NCBI RefSeq assembly: GCF_032191835.1 | Contig: NC_083240.1 | Coordinates: 13,454,001 to 13,518,000 of the forward strand | DNA from: Heteronotia binoei | Lineage: Eukaryota | Length of the DNA stretch: 64,000 nt | Direction of reading: 5' to 3' | In this document: in pieces, positions 1-56,699 of the stretch | How positions within the stretch are numbered: position 1 is the first letter of the stretch | Layout: each line of letters begins with the position of its first letter | Made by a program: the position numbers and the translations under genes | The notes under the pieces: model-generated | Told to the model about the DNA's origin: nothing | Databases searched by the model: none | Seen by the model: only the letters and a program-made list of their open reading frames with translations

Positions 1-939
1 CTAATTACAACCATGGCCGAAGCCCTCAACATTACTCTTCCGTCGGACTCACCTAAGGTCTCTGACCTTGTACACGACCTCGTGCAAACGGACTTTCCAC
101 CGGGCTCGCTTCTTCCCATGCTCCCGGTACACCTCGAAGGCCTCCGCGAAACCTGGGACAAACCTGCCTCGGTTCCACCTACCGCGAAACGCTTTGACTC
201 TCTCTACAGAGTTCACGCTCCTGAGGCTAAATTTCTTGCTTCTCATCCGGCGCCCAACTCCATTATCGTGCACTCAGCCACTAAGGCTAAACCATCCAGA
301 CATCCGACACCTCCTGACCGTGAAGGCAGGAAATTGGACACCCTGGCAAGAAAAATTTTCGGCCTTGCCTCTACAAATTCTAAACTAAACAATTATTTAG
401 CCTACTTTTCAGCCTATGTCTACAACTTGGCTATCCAATTTACGCCTCTTATTTCCGCCCTTCCTGAACCCTCCCAAAGAACGGCCTCCGGCTTGGTATC
501 AGAGCTATCTAGAGTGTCCAAGCAACAGATCAACACCATACGCCATGCTGTTTCTTGCTCGTCCAGGGTTTTTGCATCCTCTGTTGCCTTACGACGCCAC
601 GCCTGGCTGAGGTCCACAAATCTACAACCGGACATTAAACAAAAAATAGAAGACCTTCCCTTCGATGGCCTCGGCCTTTTCCATGCTTCTACTGACGAAG
701 TCTTAGCCTCGGTGGATGATGGCCGCAAACGTGCCAAGCGCTTGGGAGTTTCCCAACCGTTTTCCCAGCGTCCCAACCGTGCAAAGCCCTGGAGACCATC
801 ATTTCAAAGACGCCAAGGGTCACCTAAGCGTACCGACTTCTGGAAGAGGAAGACTGGCCAGCAGAAACCGCAGTTTCAACAAAGACCGCGGTCACAACAG
901 GCCAAAAAACCCTCCCTTCCTTCTAAACAGTCTCTTTGA
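1..939 (+). CDS. DIRS gag (ORF1), 3' part; LAP2alpha-like domain
   Basis: Frame open from base 1 (LITTMAEALN..., matching NLITTMASALN in copy 2) to TGA 937-939; RRHAWLRS..IEDLPFDG motif typical of vertebrate DIRS gag. Confidence 0.9.
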   Translation, partial: LITTMAEALNITLPSDSPKVSDLVHDLVQTDFPPGSLLPMLPVHLEGLRETWDKPASVPPTAKRFDSLYRVHAPEAKFLASHPAPNSIIVHSATKAKPSRHPTPPDREGRKLDTLARKIFGLASTNSKLNNYLAYFSAYVYNLAIQFTPLISALPEPSQRTASGLVSELSRVSKQQINTIRHAVSCSSRVFASSVALRRHAWLRSTNLQPDIKQKIEDLPFDGLGLFHASTDEVLASVDDGRKRAKRLGVSQPFSQRPNRAKPWRPSFQRRQGSPKRTDFWKRKTGQQKPQFQQRPRSQQAKKPSLPSKQSL

Positions 940-2815
940 CTCCCCCGTACCGTTCTTCAACACACGTCTGTCACCGTTCCTTCCGACTTGGAACTCGATA
1001 ACAACCGACTCCTGGGTGCTGACCATCGTGCGTCTAGGTTACGCAATCGAGTTCATTTCTCCACCTCGCCACCACTATTTCACAGCTACCCCCCCCTCTC
1101 CCCTCCTCCGTCAGGAGATCCTGGACTTGCTCCACAAGGAAGCCATAGAGCCCGTTCCCCCCCTCCATCGGGGGACAGGCTTCTATTCAAGATACTTCCT
1201 TGTTCCCAAGAGGGATGGAGGAAGGCGTCCCATTCTAGATCTAAGGAAGCTCAACAAGCACATCGCATACAGGAAGTTCAGAATGATCTCCCTGCAGTCC
1301 ATTCTGCCTCTTATCCCCAGGAATTCCTGGATGGCTTCCCTAGACCTTCAGGACGCTTACTTCCATGTGACAATCCGACCTCAACATCGGAAGTATCTAC
1401 GATTTGCCATGGGCCGGGACCACTACCAATATGTGTCCCTACCTTTCGGCCTCTCCACTGCGCCCCGCGTGTTCACCAAGTGCATGGCGGTTGTGGCAGC
1501 TGCACTTCGCACTCGGAACATTCCAGTCTTCCCGTACATCGACGACTGGCTCCTGGTGGCCCCGACACAACAGCAATTGGAGCACAACCTCGACACAGCT
1601 CTCACTCTTCTGAGCTCCCTGGGTCTCCGCGTGAATACATCAAAGTCGCACCTCACACCTACCCAGGACCTCAAGTTTATAGGCGCCCTTCTCTGCAGCT
1701 CCCTGCATCGAGCTTTTCTCCCAGAGGATCGGGCATGCACTATTATTGCCCTAGCCAAGGCAGTTCAACAGCAACCCCGTCAGTCTGCGTTCACAATCCA
1801 ACGCCTGCTGGGCCTTATGGCTGCAACGACATCTGTCCTTCGATTTGCCAGACTGCGAATGCGACAACTGCAGATCTGGTTTGTTCGAGCCTACAACCCT
1901 CAAACGCAACCGCAAGCTGCTCTGCTCACTATCCCACAGAGAGCGCTTCTATCTCTCACGTGGTGGACTGTGCCCAACAATCTACTAGAGGGCAAGCCGT
2001 TTCTACCGACTTCCCCTACGACCACTATAACAACAGATGCCTCCAAGTGGGGATGGGGAGCCCACCTAGAGGACAAAACTGTCAGAGGGCTTTGGACGAC
2101 CACCGAGAGACTCATGCACATAAACTGCTTAGAACTGATCGCGGTGCACAGAGCTCTTCAATCATTTCTCCCATTAATAAAGGGCCAGCATGTCCAGATC
2201 TCTACGGACAACATGGCGACTGTTTATTATATAAACAAGCAAGGGGGCACCAGATCCCTCCGTCTCTGTCGTATAGCCGTACTGCTCTGGGAATGGTGTG
2301 TCAAACACAACATATTTATGACTGCCATTCATCTCCCCGGTGTGGAGAATACCTTGGCCGATTCCCTCAGCAGGTTTCGGATAGACGACCACGAATGGTC
2401 CATCACTCCGACCTACCTTCGCAGCATCTTCCGCTGCTTCGGAACACCCGAGGTGGACGCCTTTGCATCCAGGAACAATGCCAAGTGTCCTCAGTTTTAT
2501 TGCAGGAGGGGCAACGACGCCTTTCTGCACGATTGGACAGGTCCCCTTCACTACTTCTTTCCACCGACCCCCCTTCTGACACGTGTGTTGGTGAAAATAA
2601 CTCGGGATGGCACAGACTGCATCCTCATTGCGCCATGGTGGCCTCGGCAACCGTGGTTCACGAGGCTGCTTCAACTGTCACGCCACACTTACTGCCGGCT
2701 TCCTCCTGCGGGCGACCTCCTCTCTCAAGCCAACGGTCAGGTTCTTCATCACAACCCTCGGGTCCTGGCCCTGACCGCCTGGAGAATACGGCCACCTTCC
2801 TCTCTACAGAAGTAG
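716..2815 (+). CDS. DIRS pol ORF: reverse transcriptase, RNase H, Dam-like methyltransferase domain
   Basis: LDLQDAYFH, LPFGLSTAPRVF, YIDD (RT); TDAS, LELIA, STDN, ADSLSR (RNase H); DAFAS..FFPP..APWWPRQPWF (MT). True start uncertain (ATG 716 or frameshift from gag). Confidence 0.93.
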   Translation: MMAANVPSAWEFPNRFPSVPTVQSPGDHHFKDAKGHLSVPTSGRGRLASRNRSFNKDRGHNRPKNPPFLLNSLFDSPVPFFNTRLSPFLPTWNSITTDSWVLTIVRLGYAIEFISPPRHHYFTATPPSPLLRQEILDLLHKEAIEPVPPLHRGTGFYSRYFLVPKRDGGRRPILDLRKLNKHIAYRKFRMISLQSILPLIPRNSWMASLDLQDAYFHVTIRPQHRKYLRFAMGRDHYQYVSLPFGLSTAPRVFTKCMAVVAAALRTRNIPVFPYIDDWLLVAPTQQQLEHNLDTALTLLSSLGLRVNTSKSHLTPTQDLKFIGALLCSSLHRAFLPEDRACTIIALAKAVQQQPRQSAFTIQRLLGLMAATTSVLRFARLRMRQLQIWFVRAYNPQTQPQAALLTIPQRALLSLTWWTVPNNLLEGKPFLPTSPTTTITTDASKWGWGAHLEDKTVRGLWTTTERLMHINCLELIAVHRALQSFLPLIKGQHVQISTDNMATVYYINKQGGTRSLRLCRIAVLLWEWCVKHNIFMTAIHLPGVENTLADSLSRFRIDDHEWSITPTYLRSIFRCFGTPEVDAFASRNNAKCPQFYCRRGNDAFLHDWTGPLHYFFPPTPLLTRVLVKITRDGTDCILIAPWWPRQPWFTRLLQLSRHTYCRLPPAGDLLSQANGQVLHHNPRVLALTAWRIRPPSSLQK

Positions 2816-3813
2816 CCAATGTCATCCTCAACGCAAGAAAGCCTTCCACCAGACTTTCTTATCAGCGTAAATGGAAGCGCTTCTGTTCCTTTGCAACATC
2901 TTCTCAGCTGCAGCCGGAAACGGCTCCACTTCCCCTAATTCTGGACTACCTACTTTCCCTACAGAAATCCGGACTCTGTTATTCCTCTGTGAAGGTTCAC
3001 CTTTCTGCGGTTTCTGCTTTCCACAAGCCGATCGATGGCAAGACTGTGTTCTCCCATCCCTTATCAAAGTCCTTTCTCAAGGGCTTGTTGCACCTCAACC
3101 CACCGGTTAAACCATTTGTTCCGACATGGAGTTTATCGTTAGTCCTTTCCTGCTTGATGAAAGCCCCTTTTGAGCCTATGGCTACCATAGACCTCAATCT
3201 CCTTTCCTGGAAGACAGCATTACTCGTAGCCCTCACCTCGGGCAAACGGGCAAGTGACTTATGCGCTTTCCGCTACGATCCTCCCTACACCATTTTCCAC
3301 AAGGACAAAGTTGTTTTGCGACCGGACCCTGCGTTCCTGCCTAAGGTTGTCTCCCAGTTCCACTTATCAACCTCAACTTCTCTACCAACGTTCTTCTCCA
3401 ACCCATCCGACCAGGGACAACGAGCCCTGCATTCCTTGGACGTTAGAAGGGCGTTATCCTTCTACCTTGATCGTACACAACCTTTCCGTAAGGACCCTAA
3501 TCTGTTTGTGGCCTACGGAAACCCCCACAGGGGTCTTAAGATTTCTACCCAACGTCTGTCAAAGTGGGTAGTCAGTGCCATCAGGTTGTGCTACGAACTG
3601 GCTAAACAGCCTTTGCCCGACGGCCTTAAGGGCCACTCTACTAGAGCGGTCTCCACGTCTTCGGCCTTTCTACAAGGCGTGTCTCTAGAGGACATTTGTG
3701 CGGCTGCATCCTGGTCCTCTCCATCCACGTTCGTCTCCCATTATGCGATGGACGTTCGTGCGAGACGTGACGCCTCCTTCGGCCAAGCGGTCCTCAGATC
3801 CATCTTCCTCTGA
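940..3813 (+). CDS. DIRS ORF3: long frame overlapping pol, ending in the tyrosine recombinase (YR domain about 2810-3813)
   Basis: No stop from the codon after the gag TGA to 3813; YR catalytic motifs SGKRASDL (R), GHSTR (HxxR), ASW, SHY (Y). Confidence 0.9.
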   Translation, partial: LPRTVLQHTSVTVPSDLELDNNRLLGADHRASRLRNRVHFSTSPPLFHSYPPLSPPPSGDPGLAPQGSHRARSPPPSGDRLLFKILPCSQEGWRKASHSRSKEAQQAHRIQEVQNDLPAVHSASYPQEFLDGFPRPSGRLLPCDNPTSTSEVSTICHGPGPLPICVPTFRPLHCAPRVHQVHGGCGSCTSHSEHSSLPVHRRLAPGGPDTTAIGAQPRHSSHSSELPGSPREYIKVAPHTYPGPQVYRRPSLQLPASSFSPRGSGMHYYCPSQGSSTATPSVCVHNPTPAGPYGCNDICPSICQTANATTADLVCSSLQPSNATASCSAHYPTESASISHVVDCAQQSTRGQAVSTDFPYDHYNNRCLQVGMGSPPRGQNCQRALDDHRETHAHKLLRTDRGAQSSSIISPINKGPACPDLYGQHGDCLLYKQARGHQIPPSLSYSRTALGMVCQTQHIYDCHSSPRCGEYLGRFPQQVSDRRPRMVHHSDLPSQHLPLLRNTRGGRLCIQEQCQVSSVLLQEGQRRLSARLDRSPSLLLSTDPPSDTCVGENNSGWHRLHPHCAMVASATVVHEAASTVTPHLLPASSCGRPPLSSQRSGSSSQPSGPGPDRLENTATFLSTEVANVILNARKPSTRLSYQRKWKRFCSFATSSQLQPETAPLPLILDYLLSLQKSGLCYSSVKVHLSAVSAFHKPIDGKTVFSHPLSKSFLKGLLHLNPPVKPFVPTWSLSLVLSCLMKAPFEPMATIDLNLLSWKTALLVALTSGKRASDLCAFRYDPPYTIFHKDKVVLRPDPAFLPKVVSQFHLSTSTSLPTFFSNPSDQGQRALHSLDVRRALSFYLDRTQPFRKDPNLFVAYGNPHRGLKISTQRLSKWVVSAIRLCYELAKQPLPDGLKGHSTRAVSTSSAFLQGVSLEDICAAASWSSPSTFVSHYAMDVRARRDASFGQAVLRSIFL

Positions 3814-3821
3814 AGCCAGGG

Positions 3822-3930
3822 GTGAGTGCATCCGCTTCCATCTTTACACTGCAGACCACGTCACATGATGGTTGATTGCGTGATTGCATGTGATTTGATT
3901 TTTCCTGTGACTAACCTTTTTCTTTACCAG
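3822..3930 (+). other. Putative spliceosomal intron in DIRS 3' UTR (109 nt)
   Basis: G|GTGAGT donor, TGACTAAC branch at 3908-3915, pyrimidine tract, CAG acceptor; same signals in copy 2. Confidence 0.7.
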
Positions 3931-3963
3931 CACCCTCCTCCAGTCCATCCAGCTGGCTAGTCA

Positions 3964-4059
3964 CCCATGTGTGGGACTGCACAGAGACCACGAAGAAGAT
4001 AAACAGGTTGCTTACCTGTAACTGATGATCTTCGAGTGGTCATCTGTGCAGTCACACAC
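3964..4059 (+). repeat. DIRS internal complementary region (ICR), copy 1
   Basis: Reverse complement of right end joined to left end; identical to ICR of copy 2. Confidence 0.93.
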
Positions 4060-4127
4060 GCCCACCCAGCCTTCCCCGCTGCTGGCCTCTTGTGATTCTT
4101 CCGTAAACTTATAGTGTCATTGCCGGC

Positions 4128-4347
4128 GGCGGCTGGAAGAAACTGAGTGGAAGGGGCGCTCTCCCCCCGCTCCAGGCATGCGCGGTCGCTGCCTGCTCCC
4201 CAGAGCGGGAGGAAAGCGCGCCAAAAGACGTTATAAACGAGCTATTGGAGCTCCGAGGAATGGATCCGTTGCCTGCGGCAAGACCCATGTGTGTGACTGC
4301 ACAGATGACCACTCGAAGATCATCAGTTACAGGTAAGCAACCTGTTT
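4128..4347 (+). repeat. DIRS right inverted terminal repeat, copy 1
   Basis: Near-identical to 53763-53983; last ~59 nt complementary to ICR 4001-4059. Confidence 0.93.
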
Positions 4348-5132
4348 TTTCCTGACTTGCATTCCTTTATCTCTCTCTCTCTCTCCCCCCACCCCCCGCC
4401 TGCCCGATTTTACTTAGGGCTGCATTCCACTTCTCCTTCTAGGAGAAGGTCTCACATCAGCTCTGGAACTGAAACATGCACAGCTTCTCACAGCATTCAC
4501 TCCCTTCCATTTGTACCTCTGCCACATTACCCATTGTGTGCATCAGTAAAAGCGCTCCGTGCCAAATTCTGAAATATAGAACAAAACAATGGGCAATTTG
4601 TAATGAATTCATTCCAGAACCACTAATTTGGAAACTCCAAAAACCAGGGAGATATTAGGATGAAGAGGAATTTTAGAACTGTTCCAGCAGTATCCACAGA
4701 GAGAAGATGTAGGCTTAGATGGTCTATAGGCAAGCACTGACTGAAAGCCACTGTAGAACCTTCTTGCTTTTCAAGATGGCGTCATGCCAGAATCTGAGTT
4801 CTTTGGGCTTTAACTGGTTTCTTGGTTCTGATGGGCTAGAAAGCTTTATGAGATTCATTCAAATAGCCCCTGCTTTTCTAGAAACAGTATTCAAAGAGAG
4901 AAGAGCCTGCATCAGGCACTCCCCCTCCAGTGACTGATGAAGAGTTGTGGCTCAGTGGTGGAGCACATGCAGAATGTCCCAAGTTCGCTCTTGACTTTTG
5001 CAGCTAAGGAATTTAACTACTGAGAAAGAGTTTTCTCTACCTGAGAAAACAAGGCTGAGATGGACAGTACAACATCAGACAGTGTAATATGCAGCTCCCT
5101 TTGTGTGGCGAAGGCCCATGACTTAGTGCTAA

Positions 5133-5477: not shown

Positions 5478-5755
5478 AGAAGAAGAAGATATTGGATTTA
5501 TATCCCGCCCTCCACTCCGAAGAGTCTCAGAGCGGCTCACAATCTCCTTTACCTTCCTCCCCCACAACAGACACCCTGTGAGGTGGGTGGGGCTGAGAGG
5601 GCTCTCACAGCAGCTGCCCTTTCAAGGACAACCTCTGCCAGAGCTATGGCTGACCCAAGGCCATTCCAGCAGGTGCAAGTGGAGGAGTGGGGAATCAAAC
5701 CCGGTTCTCCCAGATAAGAGTCCGCACACTTAACCACTACACCAAACTGGCTCTC
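5478..5755 (-). mobile_element. tRNA-derived SINE (Squam3-like), full length
   Basis: GAGAGCCAGTTTGGTGTAGTGG head, GGTTTGATTCC B box, L2-like tail, (CTT)n end on minus strand. Confidence 0.9.
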
Positions 5756-7308: not shown

Positions 7309-7596
7309 GAGAGCCAGTTTGGTGTAGTGGTTAAGTGCATGGACTCTTATCTGGAAGAACCGGGTTTGATTCCCCACTCCTCCACTTGCACCTGCTGGAT
7401 TGGCCTTGGGTTCACCATTAACTCTGGCAGAGGTTGTCCTTGAAAGGGCAGCTGCTGTGAGAGCCCTCTCCAGCCCCACCCACCTCACAGGGTGACTATT
7501 GTGGGGGGAGAAGATACAGGAGATTGTAAGCCGCTCTGAGTCTCTGATTCAGAGAGAAGGGCGGGGTATAAATCTGCAATTCTTCTTCTTCTTCTT
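7309..7596 (+). mobile_element. Squam3-like SINE, full length
   Basis: Head, body, tail and (CTT)n match. Confidence 0.9.
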
Positions 7597-8524
7597 TTGA
7601 CTGAACAGTCTTCACAGGGGCTAGAATCAGGCTTTAAACTTCTGATTCAGCAGTCAAATACATTTTAAAAGAATGGCTGCCTGAATCCACGGCGGGAATG
7701 GTTATTAGTCACAGCCACCCTGGGATAAATAATGTTGCCCAGAGGGGCGCAGTCTTGGCTGCGCCCCCTTGGAGAAGCTCAGCGTCCCGTTCAAGGCCCA
7801 GCGCTTTGGTTCTTGCATAAACATTAGAAAGCCTCCTCCTACACTTGAAATCACACATGATTTTTTTTTTTTTAAGGTTTTCAACACCACCTCTCACATT
7901 TCAAGTCTGAAACGTTTGCAATGAATACAAAAATCTCATTCAGAATCTCCATTAAGACGATTCTGTTTTTGGTGGAGTGGGCAGGAATTAGCTGCAACGG
8001 TGCCAGAACTTTTAATTTAAATCTCCCTTTCCATATTTGTATGCACCAGGACTGAGCAGATGGCGAAGCGTCAGAGATCTCAGTATGTAAAGACATTAAG
8101 ATCTTACCCCTTCTGGTGTGGGGAGAGATCTTAAGCCTTGTACTAGCCTAGAATAAAACTGACCTTTTCATATGTATGTGTGTCTGTCTAGAACTGAGGG
8201 TTTTTTAAAGCCCGGAATTCTCAATAATGCAATACTCTGCTATAAGCATAATAGCAGCTGCCTTAGAGCAGAAAGATAGAGTATCAGTTTTACCAATGAA
8301 TAATAATAAATAAGAGATGAACCAGAAGCAGGGATGGGCACGAACCGGCTCACAAAGTAATGTTCATGATGAATTTTGGGCAGGTCATGGTTCACAGACT
8401 GATGTTTGTGGCAGGTCAACTTTCATGAGCTTTCCATGAACTTTCAAGCAGTTCATGGAGGTTCACTGTGGCTCATGAATGGATACATTTACAGGCAGAC
8501 TGTCTCTGCTCATTATAAATGTTT

Positions 8525-21161: not shown

Positions 21162-21413
21162 TGCCCTTCTCTCTGAATCAGAGACTCAGAGTGGCTTACA
21201 ATCTCCTATATCTTCTCCCCTCACAACAGACACCCTGTGAGGTAGGTGGGGCTGAGAAAGCTCTCACAGCAGCTGCCCTTTCAAGGACAACTCCTGCGAT
21301 AGCTATGGCTGACCCAAGGCCATTCCAGCAGCTGCAAGTGGAGGAGTGGGGAATCAAACCCGGTTCTCCCAGATAAGAGTCTGCACACTTAACCACTACA
21401 CCAAACTGGCTCT
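21162..21413 (-). mobile_element. Squam3-like SINE
   Basis: Sequence match to family. Confidence 0.87.
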
Positions 21414-33272: not shown

Positions 33273-33297
33273 GCATTGCCAATGCTTGCAATTTATG

Positions 33298-33481
33298 CAG
33301 GGCTTTTTTTTTGTATCAGGAACTCCTTTGCATATTAGGCCACACACCCCTGATGTAGCCAATCCTCCAGGATCGTACAGGGCTCTTCTTACAGGGCCTA
33401 CTGTAAGCACTTGGAGGATTGGCTACATCAGGGGGGTGTAGCCTAATATGCAAATGAGTTCCTGCTGCAAAAAAAGCCCTG
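33298..33481. mobile_element. Palindromic hAT-type MITE
   Basis: Fold-back, CAGGGCTTTT TIRs. Confidence 0.87.
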
Positions 33482-45343: not shown

Positions 45344-45525
45344 CAGGGCTTTTTTTGTAGTGAGAACTCCTTTGCATATTAGGCCACACCTCTCTTATGT
45401 AGACATTCATTCAAGAGCTTACAGGGCTCTTATTATAGGGCCTACTGTAAGCTCTTGGAGGACTGGCTACATCAGGGGTCTGTGGCCTAATATGCAAAGG
45501 AGTTCCTGCTACAAAAAAAGCCCTA
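45344..45525. mobile_element. Palindromic hAT-type MITE
   Basis: Family match. Confidence 0.85.
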
Positions 45526-46457: not shown

Positions 46458-47677
46458 TCACTGTGAATAAAAAAAATTGAGATAGCTTTAGCTGGAAATG
46501 AGAGGCAAGAATCAGACTTCCAACCATTGAGGAAAAGGTGGTCGAGCCCCCCCCCCTCCCCATTTTTACAATATTCCATCAGCAAAGCCTCAAATAATAG
46601 ATCTGGGATTGACTTAACTGTGGGTTTTTAATAGTCCGAGCAAGGGTTGGCGTGGTGCTTGCCAGAATGTCGGATGCTAAGCAAGGGCTGACTTCATAGA
46701 AGACAGCTTCATGGGCTCAGTTGGCAGGGTTTTGCACGCAGAAGGTTCCAGCTTTGATCCTTGCTAAACCGAGTAAGACCCCCTGCCTTAGATCTTGGAG
46801 AGGTGATGCAGTTCAGAATAATCCGTGCTGGTCCAGACGAACTCGTGGCTAGAAGCAGGTGGACGGTGGCAGGAAGGTGAGCTCCGTGTCTTCTCCTTCC
46901 AGTCCCAGAGGCAGTATGCCTCTTTAGATCAGTTGCCAGGGAACACAGGCAAGAAGATGCTGTCTCAGGTCACCTGCTCACGGGCTTCCTAGAAGCAGCT
47001 GGTCAGCCACTGTGTGAACAGAAGGCTGGATTTGATGGGCCTTGGGTCTGATCCAACAGGCTTTTCTTACACTCTTATGGAGGACTTTTTTTTTGTAGCA
47101 GGAACTCCTTTGCCTATTAGGCCACACCTCCCTGGTGTAGCCAATCCTCCAAGAGCTTACAGGGCTCTTAGTACAGGGGTGTAAGCTCCAGGAGGACTGG
47201 CTTCATCAGGGGTGTGTGGCTGTTGTGTATGCGGACTCATGGTTATGTTCCTTTACCAGCATTCCTGCCTGGCTCATTGGAGCCTTGAGGACTGAGCTTG
47301 GGGACTCTAGAACAATGGGCTGTAGGATCCAAAGCCCTACTGCCCTGGTCCAATCAGAAGCCCTCTGCTGGTTCAAACGATCCAATGCTGTTCTAGCATG
47401 GACTGTATATAGTTGGCCCCGTTGGCCCAGTTAGGCAGTCTTCTTTAGCTACTAGTTACCATGCTGTAACTCCAGTAAAGAGCTATGATCACTGCAGCCG
47501 CGTCTCCTCTGTGCATTGAACCCACTACATTATAGTGACCTAATATACAAAGGAGTTCCTGCTACAAAAAAAAAGCCCTGCTGTTATGCTTCGTTGCCCT
47601 TTTTCAGTGCCTGGATTGGGGTGCTTCCTGTAGCTGGGGGGGGGGGGGGAGGGGGATGCCATCCCAGCCACCTCTTG

Positions 47678-47875
47678 ATCTTCTTCGTGGTCTCTGTGCA
47701 GTCCCACACATGGGGTCTTGCCGCAGGCAACGGATCCGTACCTCGGAGCTCCAATAGCTCGTTTATAACGTCTTTTGGCGCGCTTTCCTCCCGCCCTGGG
47801 GAGCAGGCAGCGACTGCGCATGCCTGGAGCGGGGGGAGAGCGCCTATTCCACTCAGTTTCTTCCCTTCCGCCGCC
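47678..47875 (+). repeat. DIRS left ITR
   Basis: About 47707-47864 is the exact reverse complement of about 53770-53927; first ~37 nt complementary to ICR 53598-53634. Confidence 0.95.
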
Positions 47876-48097
47876 CGGACAACACCTACCTCGTTGCGTT
47901 CCTCCTCTGGCTCGTCTCTTGGTATCGTACTACTCCTCCCTTTTCTTCACTATTTACTCTATTTTTTCCTTCTTCGTCCCATTAATATAAAAAAAAAAAA
48001 AAAAAAGGTTACCCGATTCTGCGCTTCAGCCTTTTTTCTTTCTACCCCCCCCCCCTCTTCTCGTCTCTCCCTTCCCTCCTTCCCCTGTCCGGAACGA

Positions 48098-50614
48098 ATG
48101 GAAGGGAAAATCACCTTTAAAAGGTGCAGGCAGTGTGGTTCTAAAATTCCGTCCTCGGACGGTCATTCACTCTGCCTTTTTTGCTTGGGGGAATCCCACA
48201 GAACCGATAACTGCCACCACTGTGCTTGCTTCGGCAAGCAGGCGCGCAAGAACAGAGCAGCCCGCCTTCGTAGTTTCCTCATGGAATCCTCTCTACGCGC
48301 AGTGTCTACTTCAGATCCGCCGCCTCCCCCACTGAGAGCGGGAGATTCGGCAACTTCGGCCCTTCCTACCGTACCTAGGAAGCATAAGTCCGATAAAAAG
48401 GCTTCTAAGCACTCTGAGGGTCACAAGGCGCCCAAACAGACTCGTCATGGCGAATCCAGCCTGTCGAAGCCACACCACTCGGGCCCGAAAACCTCCAGCC
48501 CGACCACTTCGGCGCCTAAGAAGCATCACGACCCGTCGGCTTCTACCTCCGTGCATACTTCCGCCTTTGCTACGGCTGCGCAATCGTCCGCATCGACCGC
48601 CCAAACGGCCTCCGCGCAATCGAATCCGATTCTACCTATTGAACTCTCGGCTCCTTCCGATGTTATCTCGGAAATGCCTCGCCTCACTCAACCCTCTATC
48701 GAAGTGATTCCGATTGGCTCGAGATCGCCCTCGGTTCACAGCCTTCCTCCTGATGATATCCTCGACACCGAGGCTCCACTTCTCGGACCCGAATCCTTCC
48801 TCGACGTCACAACGCCAGTGCAGAAGGACATTACGACTCCATTGCTTAAAGACACGGCAGCACCACTGCTAAAGGAGTCCTCGACACAAGTTTCCTCTCA
48901 TCGGCTCCGACCTGGATCCCCACGGGCCCGCTCTCGCTTGCGGTCTCCGCTTCGTCCGAGATCTCCGTTCAGAGATCGTCCCTACTCTCCGCATCGATCT
49001 CCGCGTCGTCACGACTACCAGGACCCTCGCCGTGATCGCTCCCGGTCCCGGTATGGTGACTACCTCCGTGACTACCCACGAGACCGTTCTCCTTCTCGGT
49101 CTCCATCACCTCGACTTCACTCGCGCTACCATCGGTACCTGCGTTCACCATCGCACCACAGCTATAGGCATCTCTCCGACTTCGATCCCGAGCCTCTCCC
49201 CAGAGATGTTTATATGCCTCGACTCAGGGATTATTATTCACCCGGAACCCGCGACTACTACCGTTCACGCGACCAACGATCTCCTTATTACCGCCACCTG
49301 TCACCAGATTGCTACGATGATTACCAACACTACTACTCTCCCCGAGAAGAACCAAACCCTCGCACCCGAGATGATGCGGCAGCCCTTCGGACCCGAGACG
49401 TCTTCGACTCCCAGACTGCACCTGTGCAGCCTCCCGTGATTCCTCGAAACCGAGATTCTTCCAGAACAGCATCCGCATCGGTTTCCAAGCCACCGGCTTC
49501 GCCACTCAAGCGTCCCCGGGACCCTTCACCTGTTGAACCCAAGTCTCCACAACGTCCCCTCTCGGCTTCGGATAGAGACACTTCTGATCATTCCGACTCC
49601 GAGGAGGCCCCTGCCTCACCCTCATCCGACCAGCCTCCTAGGCTTTCACCATCCGACAGTTCTAAGGCCTACCTGAATCTCATTACAACCATGGCTTCCG
49701 CACTAAACATCCCTATGTCCTCCGACTCACCAAAAGTTTCGGACGTGGTCCACGACCTAGTCCGCGCAGATTTTCCAGATAGCTCCACGCTTCCTATGCT
49801 CCCTGTACACCTTGAAGGCCTCCAGGAAGCCTGGGAGAAGCCGGCTTCGATCCCTACACTTTCTCGCCGCCTGGATTCTCTTTATAGGGTGCACGTAGCT
49901 GACTGCAAATTCCTCGCATCTCACCCGGCACCCAACTCTGTCGTGGTTCATTCCGCCACCAAGACCAAACAATCTCGCCACCCCGTTCCTCCGGACCGGG
50001 AGGGTCGAAAATTGGACACTCTGGCTAAGAAAATCTACAGTTTTTCTTCAACCAACTCCAAGTTGAACAATTATTTAGCCTACTTTGCGGCTTACTCCTT
50101 CAACTTGGCTAACCAGATTACCCCTCATATTGCATCCATGCCTGACTCATCTCAGAAGACTGTGTCGTCTCTCGTCTCTGAGCTCTCCCGTGTCAATAAA
50201 CAACAAATCAACTCTATCCGCCATGCGGTCTCCTGTTCTTCTCGAATTTTTGCAACTTCGGTGGCTTTACGTCGCCACGCCTGGCTGCGCTCTACCAACT
50301 TGCAGCCGGACATCAAACAGCGTATAGAAGACCTTCCCTTCGACGGTCTGGGACTCTTCCATGCGTCCACGGACGAGGTCCTTGCATCCGTCGATGACGG
50401 CCGCAAAAGAGCCAAACGACTTGGTGTCACACAACCAACCTCACTGCCCTCTAATAGGCAGAGACCGTGGAAGCCATCCTTCCAACGCCGCCAGCGGTCT
50501 CCCAAGTCTCAAGATTTCTGGAAAAGGAAACCTCTCCCAAAGCAACCTTTTCATCAGAGGCCACGGGCCCAACCTTCTAAGAAACAATCTCAGACAGGCA
50601 AGCAGTCTCTTTGA
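48098..50614 (+). CDS. DIRS gag (838 aa): N-terminal Cys/His zinc finger, RS/RP-rich low-complexity middle, LAP2alpha-like C-terminus
   Basis: ATG 48098; Cx2Cx9Hx2Cx2Cx4Hx4Cx2C; aligns with copy 1 gag. Confidence 0.9.
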   Translation: MEGKITFKRCRQCGSKIPSSDGHSLCLFCLGESHRTDNCHHCACFGKQARKNRAARLRSFLMESSLRAVSTSDPPPPPLRAGDSATSALPTVPRKHKSDKKASKHSEGHKAPKQTRHGESSLSKPHHSGPKTSSPTTSAPKKHHDPSASTSVHTSAFATAAQSSASTAQTASAQSNPILPIELSAPSDVISEMPRLTQPSIEVIPIGSRSPSVHSLPPDDILDTEAPLLGPESFLDVTTPVQKDITTPLLKDTAAPLLKESSTQVSSHRLRPGSPRARSRLRSPLRPRSPFRDRPYSPHRSPRRHDYQDPRRDRSRSRYGDYLRDYPRDRSPSRSPSPRLHSRYHRYLRSPSHHSYRHLSDFDPEPLPRDVYMPRLRDYYSPGTRDYYRSRDQRSPYYRHLSPDCYDDYQHYYSPREEPNPRTRDDAAALRTRDVFDSQTAPVQPPVIPRNRDSSRTASASVSKPPASPLKRPRDPSPVEPKSPQRPLSASDRDTSDHSDSEEAPASPSSDQPPRLSPSDSSKAYLNLITTMASALNIPMSSDSPKVSDVVHDLVRADFPDSSTLPMLPVHLEGLQEAWEKPASIPTLSRRLDSLYRVHVADCKFLASHPAPNSVVVHSATKTKQSRHPVPPDREGRKLDTLAKKIYSFSSTNSKLNNYLAYFAAYSFNLANQITPHIASMPDSSQKTVSSLVSELSRVNKQQINSIRHAVSCSSRIFATSVALRRHAWLRSTNLQPDIKQRIEDLPFDGLGLFHASTDEVLASVDDGRKRAKRLGVTQPTSLPSNRQRPWKPSFQRRQRSPKSQDFWKRKPLPKQPFHQRPRAQPSKKQSQTGKQSL

Positions 50615-52484
50615 CTCCCCCATCAGGCATACCAGACTATCCCCTTTTTACCCGAGTTGGAGTTCCATCACCACCGACTCTTGGGTCCTCACCATCGTGC
50701 GTCTAGGTTACGCAATAGAGTTCGTTTCGCCACCACACCACCACCACTTCATAGCCACACCTCCATCTGCTCTCTTGCAGCAGGAAATTCTGGACTTGCT
50801 CCAGAAGAATGCCATAGAACCCGTTCCTCCTCAACATCGAGGCACGGGATTCTACTCAAGATACTTCCTGGTCCCCAAACGCGATGGAGGAAAGCGCCCT
50901 ATCCTAGATCTTCGGAAGCTGAACAATTTCATCGAATGCAGGAAGTTCAGAATGATCTCCCTACACACCATCCTGCCTCTTATTCCCAGGAACTCCTGGA
51001 TGGCTTCCCTAGATCTTCAGGACGCTTACTTCCACGTGACTATCCGACCTCATCATCGGAAGTATTTAAGATTCGCTATGGGGCAAGACCACTTCCAGTA
51101 CGTATCCCTGCCCTTTGGCCTCTCCACCGCACCAAGGGTATTCACCAAGTGTATGGCGGTGGTGGCAGCGGCTCTCAGACTCCGAGACATCACAGTCTTC
51201 CCATATATAGACGACTGGCTTCTCATAGCACCGACTCAGCATCGTTTGCAGACCAATATCAGCACAACGCTCTCCCTCCTCGATTCCCTGGGCCTTCGTG
51301 TGAACACATCCAAATCCCATCTCGAGCCCACGCAGGACATCAAGTTTATAGGAGCTCTCCTTCGCACCTCTCTTCACCGTGCTTTCCTTCCAGAGGATCG
51401 AGCAATCACCATCATCACCTTAGCCAGGTCAATTCAACGACAGCCCTGCCAGTCTGCATTCACAATACAACGCCTGCTGGGCCTCATGGCCGCCACGACT
51501 TCTGTCATCCACTTTGCCAAGCTACGGATGCGACATCTACAGCTCTGGTTTGTGAGAGCCTACCATCCTCTGTTGCAACCGCAGAGCACCCTACTCACGG
51601 TTCCCCAGAGAGCTCTCTCATCCCTTACCTGGTGGACGGTACCCAGCAATCTTCTCGCGGGCATGCCGTTCCTACCGATGCCTCCAGTAGCTGTTGTGAC
51701 AACAGATGCCTCAAAGTGGGGATGGGGAGCCCACTTACAGGACAAGACCGTCAGAGGCCTTTGGACGCCCTCCGAGAGGGCCATGCACATAAACTGCTTA
51801 GAACTGATTGCCGTACACAGGGCCCTCTTATCCTTTCTTCCCCTGATCAACGGGAGCCATGTCCAGATCTCAACGGACAACATGGCAACTGTCTATTACA
51901 TCAACAAGCAAGGGGGAACCAAGTCTCTCAGACTTTGCCGTATAGCCATCGTGCTCTGGGAATGGTGTCTGGAGCACAACATCCATTTGACCGCCGTTCA
52001 CCTCCCAGGCGTAGACAATGTTCTGGCCGACTCTCTGAGCAGGTTTCGTCTGGACGACCACGAGTGGTCCCTCAATCCAACCTACCTCCGACGCATTTTC
52101 AGATGCTTCGGAACACCCATGGTGGATGCCTTTGCTTCACGGGACAATGCCAAATGCCCACGCTATTTCTCCAGAAGGGAGAACGACGCCTTCCTACACA
52201 GATGGACGGGCCCCCTCCACTACATCTTCCCACCAACCCCCCTACTGACTCGGGTTCTGACGAAGATCACACGAGACGGCACGGACTGCATCCTGGTAGC
52301 CCCCTGGTGGCCACGGCAACCATGGTTTACGAGACTTCTCCAGTTATCTCATCACACCTACCGTCGCCTTCCTCTCGTGAGCGACCTCTTGTCCCAAGCC
52401 AATGGTCAGATATTGCACCACAATCCTCAAGTACTGGCCCTAACGGCCTGGAGAATTCGACCTCCCACCTCTCCGCAGAGGTAG
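50394..52484 (+). CDS. DIRS pol ORF: RT, RNase H, MT
   Basis: Same intact motifs as copy 1; ATG 50394 is homologous to ATG 716 (frame also open from 50361); true start uncertain. Confidence 0.92.
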   Translation: MTAAKEPNDLVSHNQPHCPLIGRDRGSHPSNAASGLPSLKISGKGNLSQSNLFIRGHGPNLLRNNLRQASSLFDSPIRHTRLSPFYPSWSSITTDSWVLTIVRLGYAIEFVSPPHHHHFIATPPSALLQQEILDLLQKNAIEPVPPQHRGTGFYSRYFLVPKRDGGKRPILDLRKLNNFIECRKFRMISLHTILPLIPRNSWMASLDLQDAYFHVTIRPHHRKYLRFAMGQDHFQYVSLPFGLSTAPRVFTKCMAVVAAALRLRDITVFPYIDDWLLIAPTQHRLQTNISTTLSLLDSLGLRVNTSKSHLEPTQDIKFIGALLRTSLHRAFLPEDRAITIITLARSIQRQPCQSAFTIQRLLGLMAATTSVIHFAKLRMRHLQLWFVRAYHPLLQPQSTLLTVPQRALSSLTWWTVPSNLLAGMPFLPMPPVAVVTTDASKWGWGAHLQDKTVRGLWTPSERAMHINCLELIAVHRALLSFLPLINGSHVQISTDNMATVYYINKQGGTKSLRLCRIAIVLWEWCLEHNIHLTAVHLPGVDNVLADSLSRFRLDDHEWSLNPTYLRRIFRCFGTPMVDAFASRDNAKCPRYFSRRENDAFLHRWTGPLHYIFPPTPLLTRVLTKITRDGTDCILVAPWWPRQPWFTRLLQLSHHTYRRLPLVSDLLSQANGQILHHNPQVLALTAWRIRPPTSPQR

Positions 52485-53482
52485 CCCACGTTATTCTAAA
52501 CGCTAGGAAGCCCTCCACAAGGCTTTCGTACCAAAGGAAATGGAAACGCTTCTGTTCATTCGCGACTGCTAACCATCTACTCCCAGAATCAGTACCTCTC
52601 AATATGATCCTGGAGTATTTACTTTCCCTACAGAAATCAGGACTCTGTTACTCATCCTTGAAAGTTCATCTCTCTGCCATCTCTGCGTTCCACAACCCGG
52701 TAGACGGCAAAACAGTTTTTTCTCATTCCTTGTCCAAGTCTTTTCTCAAGGGCATGTTGCACCTCAATCCACCCGTTAAACCCCTTGTCCCAACTTGGAG
52801 TTTATCCCTAGTTCTTTCCTCGCTTATGAAAGCACCATTTGAACCTATGGCTACCATAGACCTCAGTCTCCTCTCCTGGAAGACAGCATTGCTGATTGCC
52901 CTTACCTCTGGAAAACGGGCAAGTGACTTATGCGCCTTCCGCCACGACCCTCCCTACACCATTTTTCACAAGGAAAAGGTTGTCCTCAGACCGGACCCTG
53001 CGTTCCTTCCTAAGGTTGTCTCCCAGTTCCACTTATCGACTGCGACCTCTCTGCCGACCTTTTTTCCAAACCCAACAGATCACGGACAACGGGCCCTGCA
53101 TTCGCTGGATGCAAGAAGGGCTTTATCCTTCTACCTTGATCGTACACGGCCTTTCCGTAAGGACCCTAATCTATTTGTGGCATACGGAAACCCCTGCAGG
53201 GGACTCAAAATCTCTACCCAGAGACTATCTAAATGGGTAGTTAGCGCCATTAGGCTGTGCTACGAACTGGCTAAGCAGCCTCTGCCCGAAGGCCTTAAGG
53301 CTCACTCTACCAGAGCGGTCTCGACGTCTTCGGCTTTTTTGCACGGCGTCTCCCTAGAGGACATCTGTGCTGCTGCATCGTGGTCCTCTCCCTCCACGTT
53401 CGTCTCCCATTATGCGTTGGACGTTCGTGCAAGACGTGACGCCTCCTTCGGCCAAGCGGTCCTCAGATCCATCTTTCACTGA
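50615..53482 (+). CDS. DIRS ORF3 / tyrosine recombinase
   Basis: Open from the codon after the gag TGA; R, AHSTR, W, Y catalytic residues intact. Confidence 0.9.
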   Translation, partial: LPHQAYQTIPFLPELEFHHHRLLGPHHRASRLRNRVRFATTPPPLHSHTSICSLAAGNSGLAPEECHRTRSSSTSRHGILLKILPGPQTRWRKAPYPRSSEAEQFHRMQEVQNDLPTHHPASYSQELLDGFPRSSGRLLPRDYPTSSSEVFKIRYGARPLPVRIPALWPLHRTKGIHQVYGGGGSGSQTPRHHSLPIYRRLASHSTDSASFADQYQHNALPPRFPGPSCEHIQIPSRAHAGHQVYRSSPSHLSSPCFPSRGSSNHHHHLSQVNSTTALPVCIHNTTPAGPHGRHDFCHPLCQATDATSTALVCESLPSSVATAEHPTHGSPESSLIPYLVDGTQQSSRGHAVPTDASSSCCDNRCLKVGMGSPLTGQDRQRPLDALREGHAHKLLRTDCRTQGPLILSSPDQREPCPDLNGQHGNCLLHQQARGNQVSQTLPYSHRALGMVSGAQHPFDRRSPPRRRQCSGRLSEQVSSGRPRVVPQSNLPPTHFQMLRNTHGGCLCFTGQCQMPTLFLQKGERRLPTQMDGPPPLHLPTNPPTDSGSDEDHTRRHGLHPGSPLVATATMVYETSPVISSHLPSPSSRERPLVPSQWSDIAPQSSSTGPNGLENSTSHLSAEVAHVILNARKPSTRLSYQRKWKRFCSFATANHLLPESVPLNMILEYLLSLQKSGLCYSSLKVHLSAISAFHNPVDGKTVFSHSLSKSFLKGMLHLNPPVKPLVPTWSLSLVLSSLMKAPFEPMATIDLSLLSWKTALLIALTSGKRASDLCAFRHDPPYTIFHKEKVVLRPDPAFLPKVVSQFHLSTATSLPTFFPNPTDHGQRALHSLDARRALSFYLDRTRPFRKDPNLFVAYGNPCRGLKISTQRLSKWVVSAIRLCYELAKQPLPEGLKAHSTRAVSTSSAFLHGVSLEDICAAASWSSPSTFVSHYALDVRARRDASFGQAVLRSIFH

Positions 53483-53488
53483 AATGGG

Positions 53489-53564
53489 GTGAGTGTATCC
53501 GCTTATGTCTCTATGTCATACAATCTTTGCCTTAGGCCATGTGACTAACCTTTTTCTTCTCCAG
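53489..53564 (+). other. Putative spliceosomal intron in DIRS 3' UTR (76 nt)
   Basis: G|GTGAGT, TGACTAAC at 53542-53549, pyrimidine tract, CAG. Confidence 0.7.
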
Positions 53565-53597
53565 CACCCTCCTCCAGGACACTTAGCTGGCTAGTCA

Positions 53598-53693
53598 CCC
53601 ATGTGTGGGACTGCACAGAGACCACGAAGAAGATAAACAGGTTGCTTACCTGTAACTGATGATCTTCGAGTGGTCATCTGTGCAGTCACACAC
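53598..53693 (+). repeat. DIRS ICR, copy 2
   Basis: Complementary to both element ends; junction at 53634/53635. Confidence 0.95.
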
Positions 53694-53762
53694 GCCCACC
53701 CAGCCTTCCCCGCTGCTGGCTTTTGGTACTTCTTGTCTTACCTTTTTAGTCTCTCTGCCAGT

Positions 53763-53983
53763 GGCGGCTGGAAGAAACTGAGTGGAATAGGCGCTCTCCC
53801 CCCGCTCCAGGCATGCGCAGTCGCTGCCTGCTCCCCAGGGCGGGAGGAAAGCGCGCCAAAAGACGTTATAAACGAGCTATTGGAGCTCCGAGGTACGGAT
53901 CCGTTGCCTGCGGCAAGACCCCATGTGTGTGACTGCACAGATGACCACTCGAAGATCATCAGTTACAGGTAAGCAACCTGTTT
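53763..53983 (+). repeat. DIRS right ITR with terminal extension
   Basis: Inverted match to left ITR. Confidence 0.95.
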
Positions 53984-54014
53984 TTCTCTCTCCTTTCCTT
54001 GACTCCCCCTACAT

Positions 54015-55685: not shown

Positions 55686-55970
55686 GAGAGCCAGTTTGGT
55701 GTAGTGGTCAAGTGCATGGACTCTTATCTGGGAGAACCAGGTTTGATTCCCCACTCCTCCACTTGCACCTGCTGGAATGGCCTCGGGTCAGCCATAGCTC
55801 TGGCAGAGGTTGTCCTTGAAAGGGCAGCTGCTGTGAGAGCCCTCTCAGCACCACCCACCTCACAGGGTGTCTGTTGTGGGTGGAGGAGATCTAGGAGATT
55901 GTAAGCCGCTCTGAGTCTCTGATTCAGGGAGAAGGGTGGGGTATAAAACTGCAATTCTTTTTCTTCTTCT
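55686..55970 (+). mobile_element. Squam3-like SINE, full length
   Basis: Sequence match to family. Confidence 0.9.
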
Positions 55971-56699
55971 TTCTCAGTCCTTCAGTCCAAGCACTGAACT
56001 CCATCTCTGTGTTTACATCCAGGTGTGTTCTGCTGGGCTTATCCTGTTTCTCCGGGAAGCCCTATGCATGGGATAGTTTGTAGTGAGATAAAGGGGGGAG
56101 GGGACTTGCATCTGAGTTTCTAGACTGTTGCCTCAGCCCTGGTACGTTGCCTATCCATGATGGGAACATGAGGACTGCAAGCACATTTGAAGTTCTGTTG
56201 CCTTTACAAATGGTGCCTGTTGTGACAGTGTCTATTTTGTGTATGCGTGTGTGGGCAATCCACTCGTCAGGCAAACCGGCGCTTCCCCGACACTTTCTTC
56301 TGCATTTGGCCCTGACCTATTTTATAACCGTATAGGGGAGAAAGAAAGATTAAAGCGACATCAGCGAAACGCGGCACTCGTCAAAAATCTTGCGTGCTTT
56401 GCGATGCTACTGGGGATTCAGTCAGGGGTGGCTTTGTGGTAGGAGAGCGACTGCCTCTCACTTTTCAAGCTATCGCCTGGCATCAGCAGAATCCGGAAGG
56501 GTCTTTGGTGTTGACTGATGTGCCAAGGAGTGAAGGGATTCTTTTTTTGCCTCCCTTCTCAAGGCTGCTCTCATTCGCAGCGATGTGCTGGATCCTGGAA
56601 GTGAGGGGCTGTGTGTTTGTGCATGTTGAGGCTGGAAGCGGGTGGAGATTTCTCTTAAATGACAATCCCCCCTCTGTCATCTGCATGGAGTGCAAAAGT

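What the first reader, a model, noticed from the sequence alone, without database searches (positions are those of the whole stretch)
940..2815. Recombinase ORF is in frame with gag, separated by one UGA, and stop-free across about 1.87 kb of pol overlap: read-through to Gag-linker-YR
Seen: in both copies the frame after the gag TGA stays open to the YR stop (957 and 955 codons). In copy 1 the first in-frame ATG is at 1735, 265 codons in. The first ATG shared by both copies is at 2053. The overlapping ~620 aa differ heavily between copies yet neither has a stop. Synonymous divergence is high: YR 2821-2880 versus 52490-52549 shows 14 substitutions and 0 amino-acid changes. In this frame any pol codon ending in T before an AAN/AGN/GAN codon would create a stop, so openness must be selected. 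Established: long pol/YR overlaps are known in DIRS1 elements, and UGA followed by C is a leaky stop context. Inference: the frame is translated from upstream, by UGA read-through giving a ~1794-aa Gag-YR in copy 2. Together with the +1 shift, one codon would set the stoichiometry of Gag, Gag-Pol and Gag-YR.
Basis: partly seen in the sequence, partly recalled or inferred. Interest (0 to 1): 0.85.

Follow-up and report, generated by a model that had tools for sequence, protein, structure and literature searches.

The report
DIRS gag-recombinase frame kept open
In this DIRS1-type retrotransposon the recombinase reading frame continues the gag frame across a single UGA and is kept free of stop codons through about 625 codons that overlap pol; relatives in fish and frogs share the pattern, which points to, but does not prove, a Gag-spacer-recombinase fusion made by stop-codon read-through.

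Summary
In both copies the gag frame and the recombinase (YR) frame are the same frame. One TGA separates them, and 957 and 955 codons follow without a stop. Reshuffling synonymous pol codons predicts 21 and 19 stops in that frame; none is seen. At the 100 and 104 codon junctions where a pol third-position T would make a stop, T is never used.

The avoidance extends upstream of every in-frame ATG. The amino-acid sequence of the overlap is not conserved beyond what pol imposes. The frame is therefore kept open, not kept meaningful.

Five other families with DNA in hand show the same geometry: Xenopus, a carp and three unlabelled assemblies. Two more match by coordinates only.

Two squamate families differ. 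Their YR frame opens only 110 to 225 codons after the gag stop, and NCBI gene models join gag to it by canonical introns.

Read-through of the UGA is the simplest route in this family, but nothing here shows translation. No conserved stimulatory RNA structure was found. Reinitiation, non-AUG starts or splicing remain possible. Long pol/YR overlap is already published for DIRS1-like elements. The scan has noted the same idea on other copies in this genome.

The parts
1..939 (+). Copy 1 gag, 3' part (the element is cut by the window start); ends in CTT TGA C
   Evidence: 76% aa identity to copy 2 gag
937..939 (+). Copy 1 gag stop TGA, the only stop between gag and the recombinase in this frame
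707..2815 (+). Copy 1 pol frame (+1 relative to gag): RT, RNase H, Dam-like methyltransferase; ends TAG
   Evidence: Pfam hits on the copy 2 equivalent
940..2815 (+). Copy 1 stop-free part of the recombinase frame overlapping pol (625 codons); no amino-acid conservation of its own
2816..3813 (+). Copy 1 non-overlapping tyrosine recombinase domain; ends TGA
   Evidence: Phage_int_SAM_1 at residues 634-696 of the frame
3964..4349 (+). Copy 1 internal complementary region and right terminal repeat
47666..47875 (+). Copy 2 left terminus / inverted terminal repeat
   Evidence: 47676-47864 inverted against 53770-53958, 97%
48098..50614 (+). Copy 2 gag from its first ATG (838 aa), ending CTT TGA C
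50328..52484 (+). Copy 2 pol frame (+1): RVT_1, RT_RNaseH, weak Dam
50615..52484 (+). Copy 2 stop-free part of the recombinase frame overlapping pol (623 codons)
52485..53482 (+). Copy 2 non-overlapping tyrosine recombinase domain
53598..53693 (+). Copy 2 internal complementary region (complementary to 47666-47714 and to 53925-53987)
53770..53987 (+). Copy 2 right inverted terminal repeat and terminus

Best explanation
Both copies are DIRS1-like retrotransposons in which the recombinase (YR) can only be reached by translating the gag frame onward. A minority of ribosomes decode the gag UGA (context CUU UGA C) as sense. They then read about 625 codons in the frame that overlaps pol and finish with the YR domain, giving a Gag-spacer-YR protein of about 1794 aa in copy 2. 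The spacer has no sequence function of its own. Selection only removes stop codons from it, because any stop would cut YR off from Gag. Fusion to Gag would carry YR into the particle or complex, as read-through or frameshift Gag-Pol fusions do in retroviruses.

Shown: the geometry, the stop avoidance, its reach upstream of all AUGs, its recurrence in other families, and the lack of amino-acid constraint. Inferred: that ribosomes enter by read-through, that the product is fused to Gag, and what the fusion is for.
For: - One TGA lies between gag and 957/955 open codons.
- There are 0 stops against 21.3 and 18.6 expected, with a minimum of 9 and 7 in 20000 shuffles. T is never used at the 100/104 stop-prone junctions but is used in the control contexts.
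- The stop-free run precedes the first ATG by 265, 107, 196, 82, 134, 27, 20 and 39 codons in the eight sequences. About 28 stops are expected there in sum, and ATG positions are not conserved.
- The same frame, a single TGA, pol at +1 and 0 stops against 11-38 expected are seen in L001, L002, L003, L004, L005 (Xenopus laevis) and L008 (Cirrhinus). P0036 and a Bufo locus match by coordinates.
- The gag stop is TGA in all nine families whose DNA was read, while pol and YR stops vary.
- YR-frame identity in the overlap is 0.478 against 0.493 +/- 0.009 in permutations that keep the pol alignment. Ten of the eleven variants listed across the overlap in RNA-library contigs are pol-synonymous; none creates a stop.
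- In families where the early part is not open (L006, L007), that part carries 7 and 9 stops, as chance predicts. Its emptiness in this family is therefore meaningful.
- No good splice donor lies in gag of either copy by a rough matrix.
Against: - There is no direct evidence of translation. The RNA data are short contigs from a metatranscriptomic library and show only presence.
- The 124 nt after the UGA show no significant or shared fold in seven elements (z from +0.5 to -1.9).
- The 3' context is not uniform (CUC, CGG, CGC, GAU, GGC, GAC), and none is the strongest known motif.
- The TGA-C is also dictated by pol codons (Phe-Asp), so its conservation is not independent evidence.
- In-frame gag/YR follows arithmetically from gag-to-pol being +1 and pol-to-YR being -1. 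The families also share ancestry, so the cases are not independent.
- L006 and L007 keep 521 and 412 stop-free overlap codons without an open path from the gag stop, so another entry route exists in the group.
- Piednoel et al. 2011 (PMC3266345) found a long overlap in only half of 28 DIRS1-like elements.
Confidence: 0.5

Rival explanations
1. The YR frame is translated from close to its 5' end, but not by read-through. Candidate routes are reinitiation after gag termination, a non-AUG start such as the TTG at 988/50657, an internal ribosome entry site, or a spliced subgenomic RNA whose acceptor lies near the gag stop. The product may or may not carry Gag.
For: Stop avoidance only shows that ribosomes traverse the frame, not how they enter it. 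In squamate relatives, NCBI gene models join gag to the YR frame by canonical introns: GTATGT...ACAG over 632 nt in L006, and GTCAGT...ACAG over 753 nt in L007. The frame opens 24 and 10 codons before those acceptors. Acceptor-like sites conserved in both copies lie at 1115/50784 and at 1321/50990; the latter is homologous to the L006 acceptor.
Against: Gag of this family has no good donor (best rough scores -1.7 and 2.4). No canonical joint appears in the RNA contigs. Splicing to 1115 or 1321 would not require 940-1115/1321 to be open, yet it is open here and in five other families. Reinitiation after an 838-codon ORF is inefficient without special signals (established knowledge), and no start codon is conserved near the stop. 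In-frame placement is needed by none of these routes. The squamate introns come from gene predictors that favour acceptors just after an ORF opens, so they are weak evidence.
Confidence: 0.27
2. Ribosomes enter the YR frame from pol by -1 frameshifting. The frame is kept open because shifting happens early in pol or at several places, giving Gag-Pol(N-part)-spacer-YR products.
For: YR is the -1 frame of pol in every family examined, including L006, where gag is in frame with pol. In L006 and L007 the open stretch starts inside pol, which an early -1 shift could serve as well as splicing.
Against: In this family the frame is open right back to the gag stop, before pol has any conserved sequence. 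No slippery heptamer was sought or found. A late shift, the usual arrangement, would need no long overlap.
Confidence: 0.1
3. The open frame is not translated. It reflects codon-pair or dinucleotide bias of pol, or inheritance of an ancestral state without current selection.
For: TpA is somewhat depleted at pol codon junctions (T before AC 6-12%).
Against: T before AT is 18-22% and T before GC/GT is 24-45%, but it is 0% before AA, AG and GA. Four-fold sites between the copies differ at 54%, so stops would have arisen. The same region carries 7-9 stops in L006/L007 while pol stays intact.
Confidence: 0.03
4. The overlap encodes a folded or otherwise sequence-specific N-terminal domain of the recombinase (true dual coding).
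For: The open frame is long and widespread. BLAST finds weak similarity (22-29%) between overlap translations of different families.
Against: That similarity is what the shared pol nucleotides impose. Identity (0.478) and BLOSUM score are not above the pol-preserving permutations. Pfam finds nothing before residue 632. Variants in expressed copies are pol-synonymous and change the YR-frame residue.
Confidence: 0.05

Closest known systems
Long pol/YR ORF overlap of DIRS1-like retrotransposons (Piednoel et al. 2011, PMC3266345; Poulter and Goodwin 2005, recalled from memory, not held)
   Same: The element is gag, then RT-RH-MT pol, then YR, with inverted terminal repeats and an internal complementary region. 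[quoted passage not shown]
   Different: The held literature records the overlap without quantifying the selection for it. It does not note that the ORF is the gag frame continued past one UGA, and it proposes no route of translation.
Gag-Pol by in-frame stop read-through in gammaretroviruses such as murine leukaemia virus (established knowledge)
   Same: One leaky stop at the end of gag lets a minority of ribosomes make a Gag fusion that brings an enzyme into the particle.
   Different: There the stop is UAG followed by a defined pseudoknot, and the downstream frame is unique coding sequence. Here the stop is UGA, no structure was detected, and the first 625 codons are the alternative frame of pol with no conservation of their own.
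Shifty-stop +1 frameshifting: bacterial prfB (CUU UGA C) and antizyme (UCC UGA) (established knowledge)
   Same: The gag stop of this family, and of L003, sits in exactly CUU UGA C. L008 has UCC UGA and L007 has UUU UGA C. Pol lies in the +1 frame, and its conservation begins at that point.
   Different: No stimulators were identified. Three families have CAA UGA, which cannot re-pair. The frameshift was not tested here.
UGA-C / UGA-CGG read-through in alphaviruses and plant viruses (established knowledge)
   Same: UGA followed by C is the leakiest tetranucleotide. L004 has CAA UGA CGG, and L002 has CAA UGA CGC.
   Different: The contexts are not uniform across DIRS families, and they are also constrained by the overlapping pol codons.

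Membership tests
DIRS1-like retrotransposon | gag, pol with RT, RNase H and Dam-like methyltransferase, and a tyrosine recombinase; no protease or DDE integrase | tested here: met
   Pfam finds RVT_1, RT_RNaseH and weak Dam in pol, and Phage_int_SAM_1 in the YR frame. YR homologues are DIRS-type proteins of reptiles, amphibians and fish. Gag has no Pfam hit here, but relatives' gag carries LAP2alpha.
DIRS1-like retrotransposon | Inverted terminal repeats | tested here: met
   47676-47864 is inverted against 53770-53958 at 97%.
DIRS1-like retrotransposon | Internal complementary region matching both termini | tested here: met
   53598-53646 is complementary to 47666-47714, and 53631-53693 to 53925-53987.
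DIRS1-like retrotransposon | Long overlap of the YR ORF with pol (present in about half of described members) | tested here: met
   624 and 622 pol codons are overlapped.
Programmed stop-codon read-through | Downstream ORF in frame with, and open from, the stop | tested here: met
Programmed stop-codon read-through | Leaky stop and context | tested here: inconclusive
   The stop is UGA in all nine families read, and +4 is C in six of the nine. Contexts vary, however, and are co-determined by pol codons.
Programmed stop-codon read-through | Stimulatory RNA structure 3' of the stop | tested here: not met
   Folds of 124 nt in seven elements give z from +0.5 to -1.9, with no common structure. Pseudoknots were not modelled. 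Not all read-through sites need a structure.
Programmed stop-codon read-through | Protein-level conservation of the extension | tested here: inconclusive
   The first 625 residues show no constraint beyond stop avoidance. The distal YR domain is strongly conserved (90% between copies).
Programmed stop-codon read-through | Read-through product or footprints detected | not testable with these tools
   Only short contigs from RNA libraries were available.

The most novel reading that the evidence does not exclude
In a widespread lineage of vertebrate DIRS1-like elements, one UGA at the end of gag is a three-way recoding switch: termination gives Gag, a +1 shift gives Gag-Pol, and read-through gives Gag-spacer-YR. 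The whole pol gene doubles as an obligatory translated spacer whose only constraint is to contain no stop. Lineages that lost the open path (squamates) replaced read-through by splicing gag onto the same frame.
Probability: 0.35. Interest if true: 0.8.

Novelty: new variant of a known kind. Interest (0 to 1): 0.68.

Why it matters
The long pol/recombinase overlap of DIRS elements has been described for decades without an explanation, and how DIRS elements express pol and YR is unknown. The data here turn the oddity into a quantified signature of selection: more than 600 codons kept open but otherwise unconstrained. They also yield a simple hypothesis that a reporter assay, ribosome profiling or mass spectrometry could settle. 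If true, it would be an unusually long translated spacer maintained only by stop avoidance, and a case of one stop codon apportioning three products. It would also give annotators a rule for recognising intact DIRS copies.

Tried and rejected
- **RNA folding** downstream of the UGA in seven elements found nothing significant or shared.
- **RNA evidence.** Only two coded runs hold the family, as short Logan contigs. Laying them showed coverage of the whole of copy 1 and many variants. It gave no canonical joints and cannot show translation, strand or ends.
It found no good donor in gag. Acceptor-like sites exist, but they are common in this pyrimidine-rich coding sequence.
- **Pol-frame openness upstream of the gag stop** runs 32-122 codons but is not more than chance given the gag residues. 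It does not place the gag-to-pol shift upstream.
- **Synonymous rate in the overlap.** Four-fold distance is 0.54 in the overlap, against 0.67 in gag and 0.41 in YR. The comparison is confounded, because identity between the copies rises toward the 3' end. I rely on the permutation test instead.
- **The PA-X-type motif** UCC UUU CGU, noted elsewhere in this genome, is absent from both gag/pol overlaps here.
- **Look-ups that gave no DNA.** P0005 (turtle) is not on record. P0036 and P0033 returned coordinates only. L009 (Varanus) is a decayed copy with a patchwork gene model and was set aside.
- **The 48-nt 'intron' in the Cirrhinus gene model** merely skips the TGA. I treat it as a predictor artefact.
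- **Literature.** Goodwin and Poulter 2001 and Poulter and Goodwin 2005 are not held, so I cannot exclude that they mention the shared frame.
- **Survey bias.** The homologue search only admits YR-frame products of 526-1675 aa. Elements without a long overlap were therefore not sampled.

Full report
**What is there.** The window holds two DIRS1-like retrotransposons.
- Copy 1 (1 to about 4349) is cut by the window start.
- Copy 2 (47666-53987) is complete. Its inverted terminal repeats are 47676-47864 and 53770-53958 (97%). Its internal complementary region, 53598-53693, matches both termini.
- Pfam finds RVT_1, RT_RNaseH and a weak Dam match in pol. It finds only a phage-integrase SAM-like domain, at residues 632-696, in the recombinase frame.
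- The copies are 78% identical over 4.3 kb.

**Checking the observation.**
- In copy 1 the gag frame stops at 937-939 (TGA) and next at 3811, so 957 codons are open.
- In copy 2 the stops are at 50612 and 53480, so 955 codons are open.
- Pol is the +1 frame, at 707-2815 and 50328-52484.
- First in-frame ATGs are at 1735 and 50936, and the first shared one is at 2053/51722.
- The 60-nt recombinase sample differs at 14 bases with no amino-acid change.

**Is it more than chance?** It is, by a wide margin.
- I shuffled synonymous pol codons among positions of the same residue. This gave 21.3 +/- 3.7 stops in the recombinase frame for copy 1 and 18.6 +/- 3.5 for copy 2. The minima in 20000 shuffles were 9 and 7, against 0 observed.
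- A stop arises in this frame only when a pol codon ends in T and the next begins AA, AG or GA. There are 100 and 104 such junctions, and T is never used at them.
- T is used at 6-12% before AC, 18-22% before AT and 8-45% elsewhere. The avoidance is therefore specific to stops and is not TpA depletion.
- The third frame has 29 and 31 stops.

**What kind of constraint is it?**
- Between the copies, pol is 82% identical at the protein level, the free recombinase domain 90%, and the recombinase frame inside the overlap 48%.
- I permuted codon pairs among pol alignment columns of the same residue pair. This keeps the pol alignment and gives 0.493 +/- 0.009 identity in the overlap frame. The observed value of 0.478 is not higher, and neither is the BLOSUM score.
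- Synonymous third positions at stop-prone junctions differ less between the copies (0.28) than other positions do (0.48), as expected if only T is forbidden.
- Of the eleven variants listed across the overlap in RNA-library contigs, ten are pol-synonymous. Nine of those ten change the overlap-frame residue, and none makes a stop.
- The frame is kept open, but its sequence is free. It behaves as a spacer.

**Where must translation enter?**
- The stop-free run begins at the gag stop and precedes the first in-frame ATG by 265 codons in copy 1 and 107 in copy 2.
- In the six related sequences it precedes the first ATG by 20-196 codons.
- The shuffles predict 28 stops in total in these pre-ATG stretches, and none is present. 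ATG positions are not conserved.
- An AUG start inside the frame therefore does not explain the pattern.

**Relatives.**
- A search with the recombinase part found reptile homologues at 52-56% identity and amphibian and fish homologues at about 40%. Many products are 935-962 aa long.
- I read DNA for L001-L004 (unlabelled assemblies), L005 (Xenopus laevis) and L008 (Cirrhinus mrigala).
- All six have gag and the recombinase frame in one frame, exactly one stop between them (always TGA), and pol at +1.
- All six have 0 stops over 612-778 overlap codons, against 11-38 expected.
- Two more loci fit by coordinates only: P0036 and a Bufo locus.
- Stop contexts are CTT TGA CTC (this family and L003), CAA TGA CGG, CAA TGA CGC, CAA TGA GAT, CGC TGA GGC and TCC TGA GAC.

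**Two informative exceptions.**
- *L006 (Sceloporus).* Gag is in frame with pol across a TGA. The recombinase frame, still -1 of pol, carries 7 stops (6.8 expected) in the first 109 codons, then none (10.6 expected) in 521 codons.
- *L007 (Anolis sagrei).* The frames are as in this window, but there are 9 stops in the first 225 codons and none in the next 412. Pol is intact over the same bases.
- *Gene models.* NCBI models at both loci join gag to the recombinase frame by canonical introns, whose acceptors lie 24 and 10 codons after the frame opens.
- *What this shows.* It supports a Gag-spacer-recombinase product as what is conserved. It also shows that the early part fills with stops when it is not needed.
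- *Caveat.* Predictors tend to pick such acceptors, and I could not check transcripts.
- *Consequence.* Read-through cannot be the universal route to the recombinase frame in this group.

**Route in this family.**
- Read-through of the UGA is the simplest explanation of a frame that is open exactly from the gag stop and in frame with gag.
- Against it, no shared or significant RNA fold follows the stop.
- The contexts vary among families. The TGA-C is also imposed by pol's Phe-Asp codons.
- The shared frame follows arithmetically from the +1 and -1 relations, and the families share ancestry.
- Gag has no good splice donor here. The RNA contigs show no canonical joints, but they are too short to decide.
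- I put read-through at about 0.5, other entry near the 5' end at about 0.27, and frameshifting from pol at about 0.1.

**The +1 shift.**
- CTT TGA C is the prfB-type shifty stop.
- Pol conservation between the copies begins at the stop.
- The pol frame's openness upstream of the stop is within chance.
- The idea of one codon giving three outcomes is therefore compatible with the data, but it was not tested.

**Known or new?**
- The long pol/recombinase overlap is published (PMC3266345; also PMC9210276 and PMC3783388).
- In the held literature I found no mention of the shared frame, the single UGA, a test of selection or a read-through proposal. Two older reviews are not held.
- The scan itself has noted the same idea on other copies of this genome. 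One follow-up reached a similar reading.

Noticed in passing
window 3906-4349 versus 53540-53985: The 3' non-coding end (internal complementary region plus right terminal repeat) is 93-100% identical between the two copies, while the coding parts are 74-86% identical. Identity climbs to 0.91 in the last 160 nt of the recombinase gene. This suggests recombination between subfamilies or strong cis constraint on the termini.
   Followed up: partly
L006:3796-5691 (Sceloporus undulatus): Gag and pol are in the same frame, separated by one TGA (AAC TGA GGG). This family would make Gag-Pol by read-through rather than by a +1 shift. The decayed Varanus copy L009 has the same gag/pol frame relation.
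   Followed up: partly
L006:3569-4200 and L007:3569-4321: NCBI gene models (P0014, P0012, P0010) fuse gag to the recombinase frame through canonical GT...AG introns of 632 and 753 nt. The L006 acceptor is homologous to the acceptor-like site at window 1321/50990, in the RT motif ILPL.
   Followed up: partly
window 47489-48097: In copy 2 the gag frame is open for 204 codons upstream of its first ATG, running through the left terminal repeat. I did not test whether this exceeds chance.
   Followed up: no
L005:4917-4925; L008:2974-2982; L007:3613-3622: The other gag-stop contexts are suggestive in different ways. Xenopus has TGAGATG, with an ATG in the pol frame two bases after the stop. The carp has TCC TGA, the antizyme-type shift site. 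Anolis has TTT TGA C.
   Followed up: no
window 55686-55972 and about 15 other places (e.g. 7309-7597, 5478-5755, 21164-21413): A repeat family of about 285 bp (80-93% identity, both orientations) is scattered through the window. A second family of about 135 bp recurs, often as adjacent inverted pairs (47075-47220, 33293-33442, 45350-45486 and others).
   Followed up: no
window 48098-50611: Gag of this family has no Pfam hit, whereas gag of the amphibian relatives (L004, L005, Bufo) and of one Sceloporus model carries LAP2alpha (PF11560).
   Followed up: no
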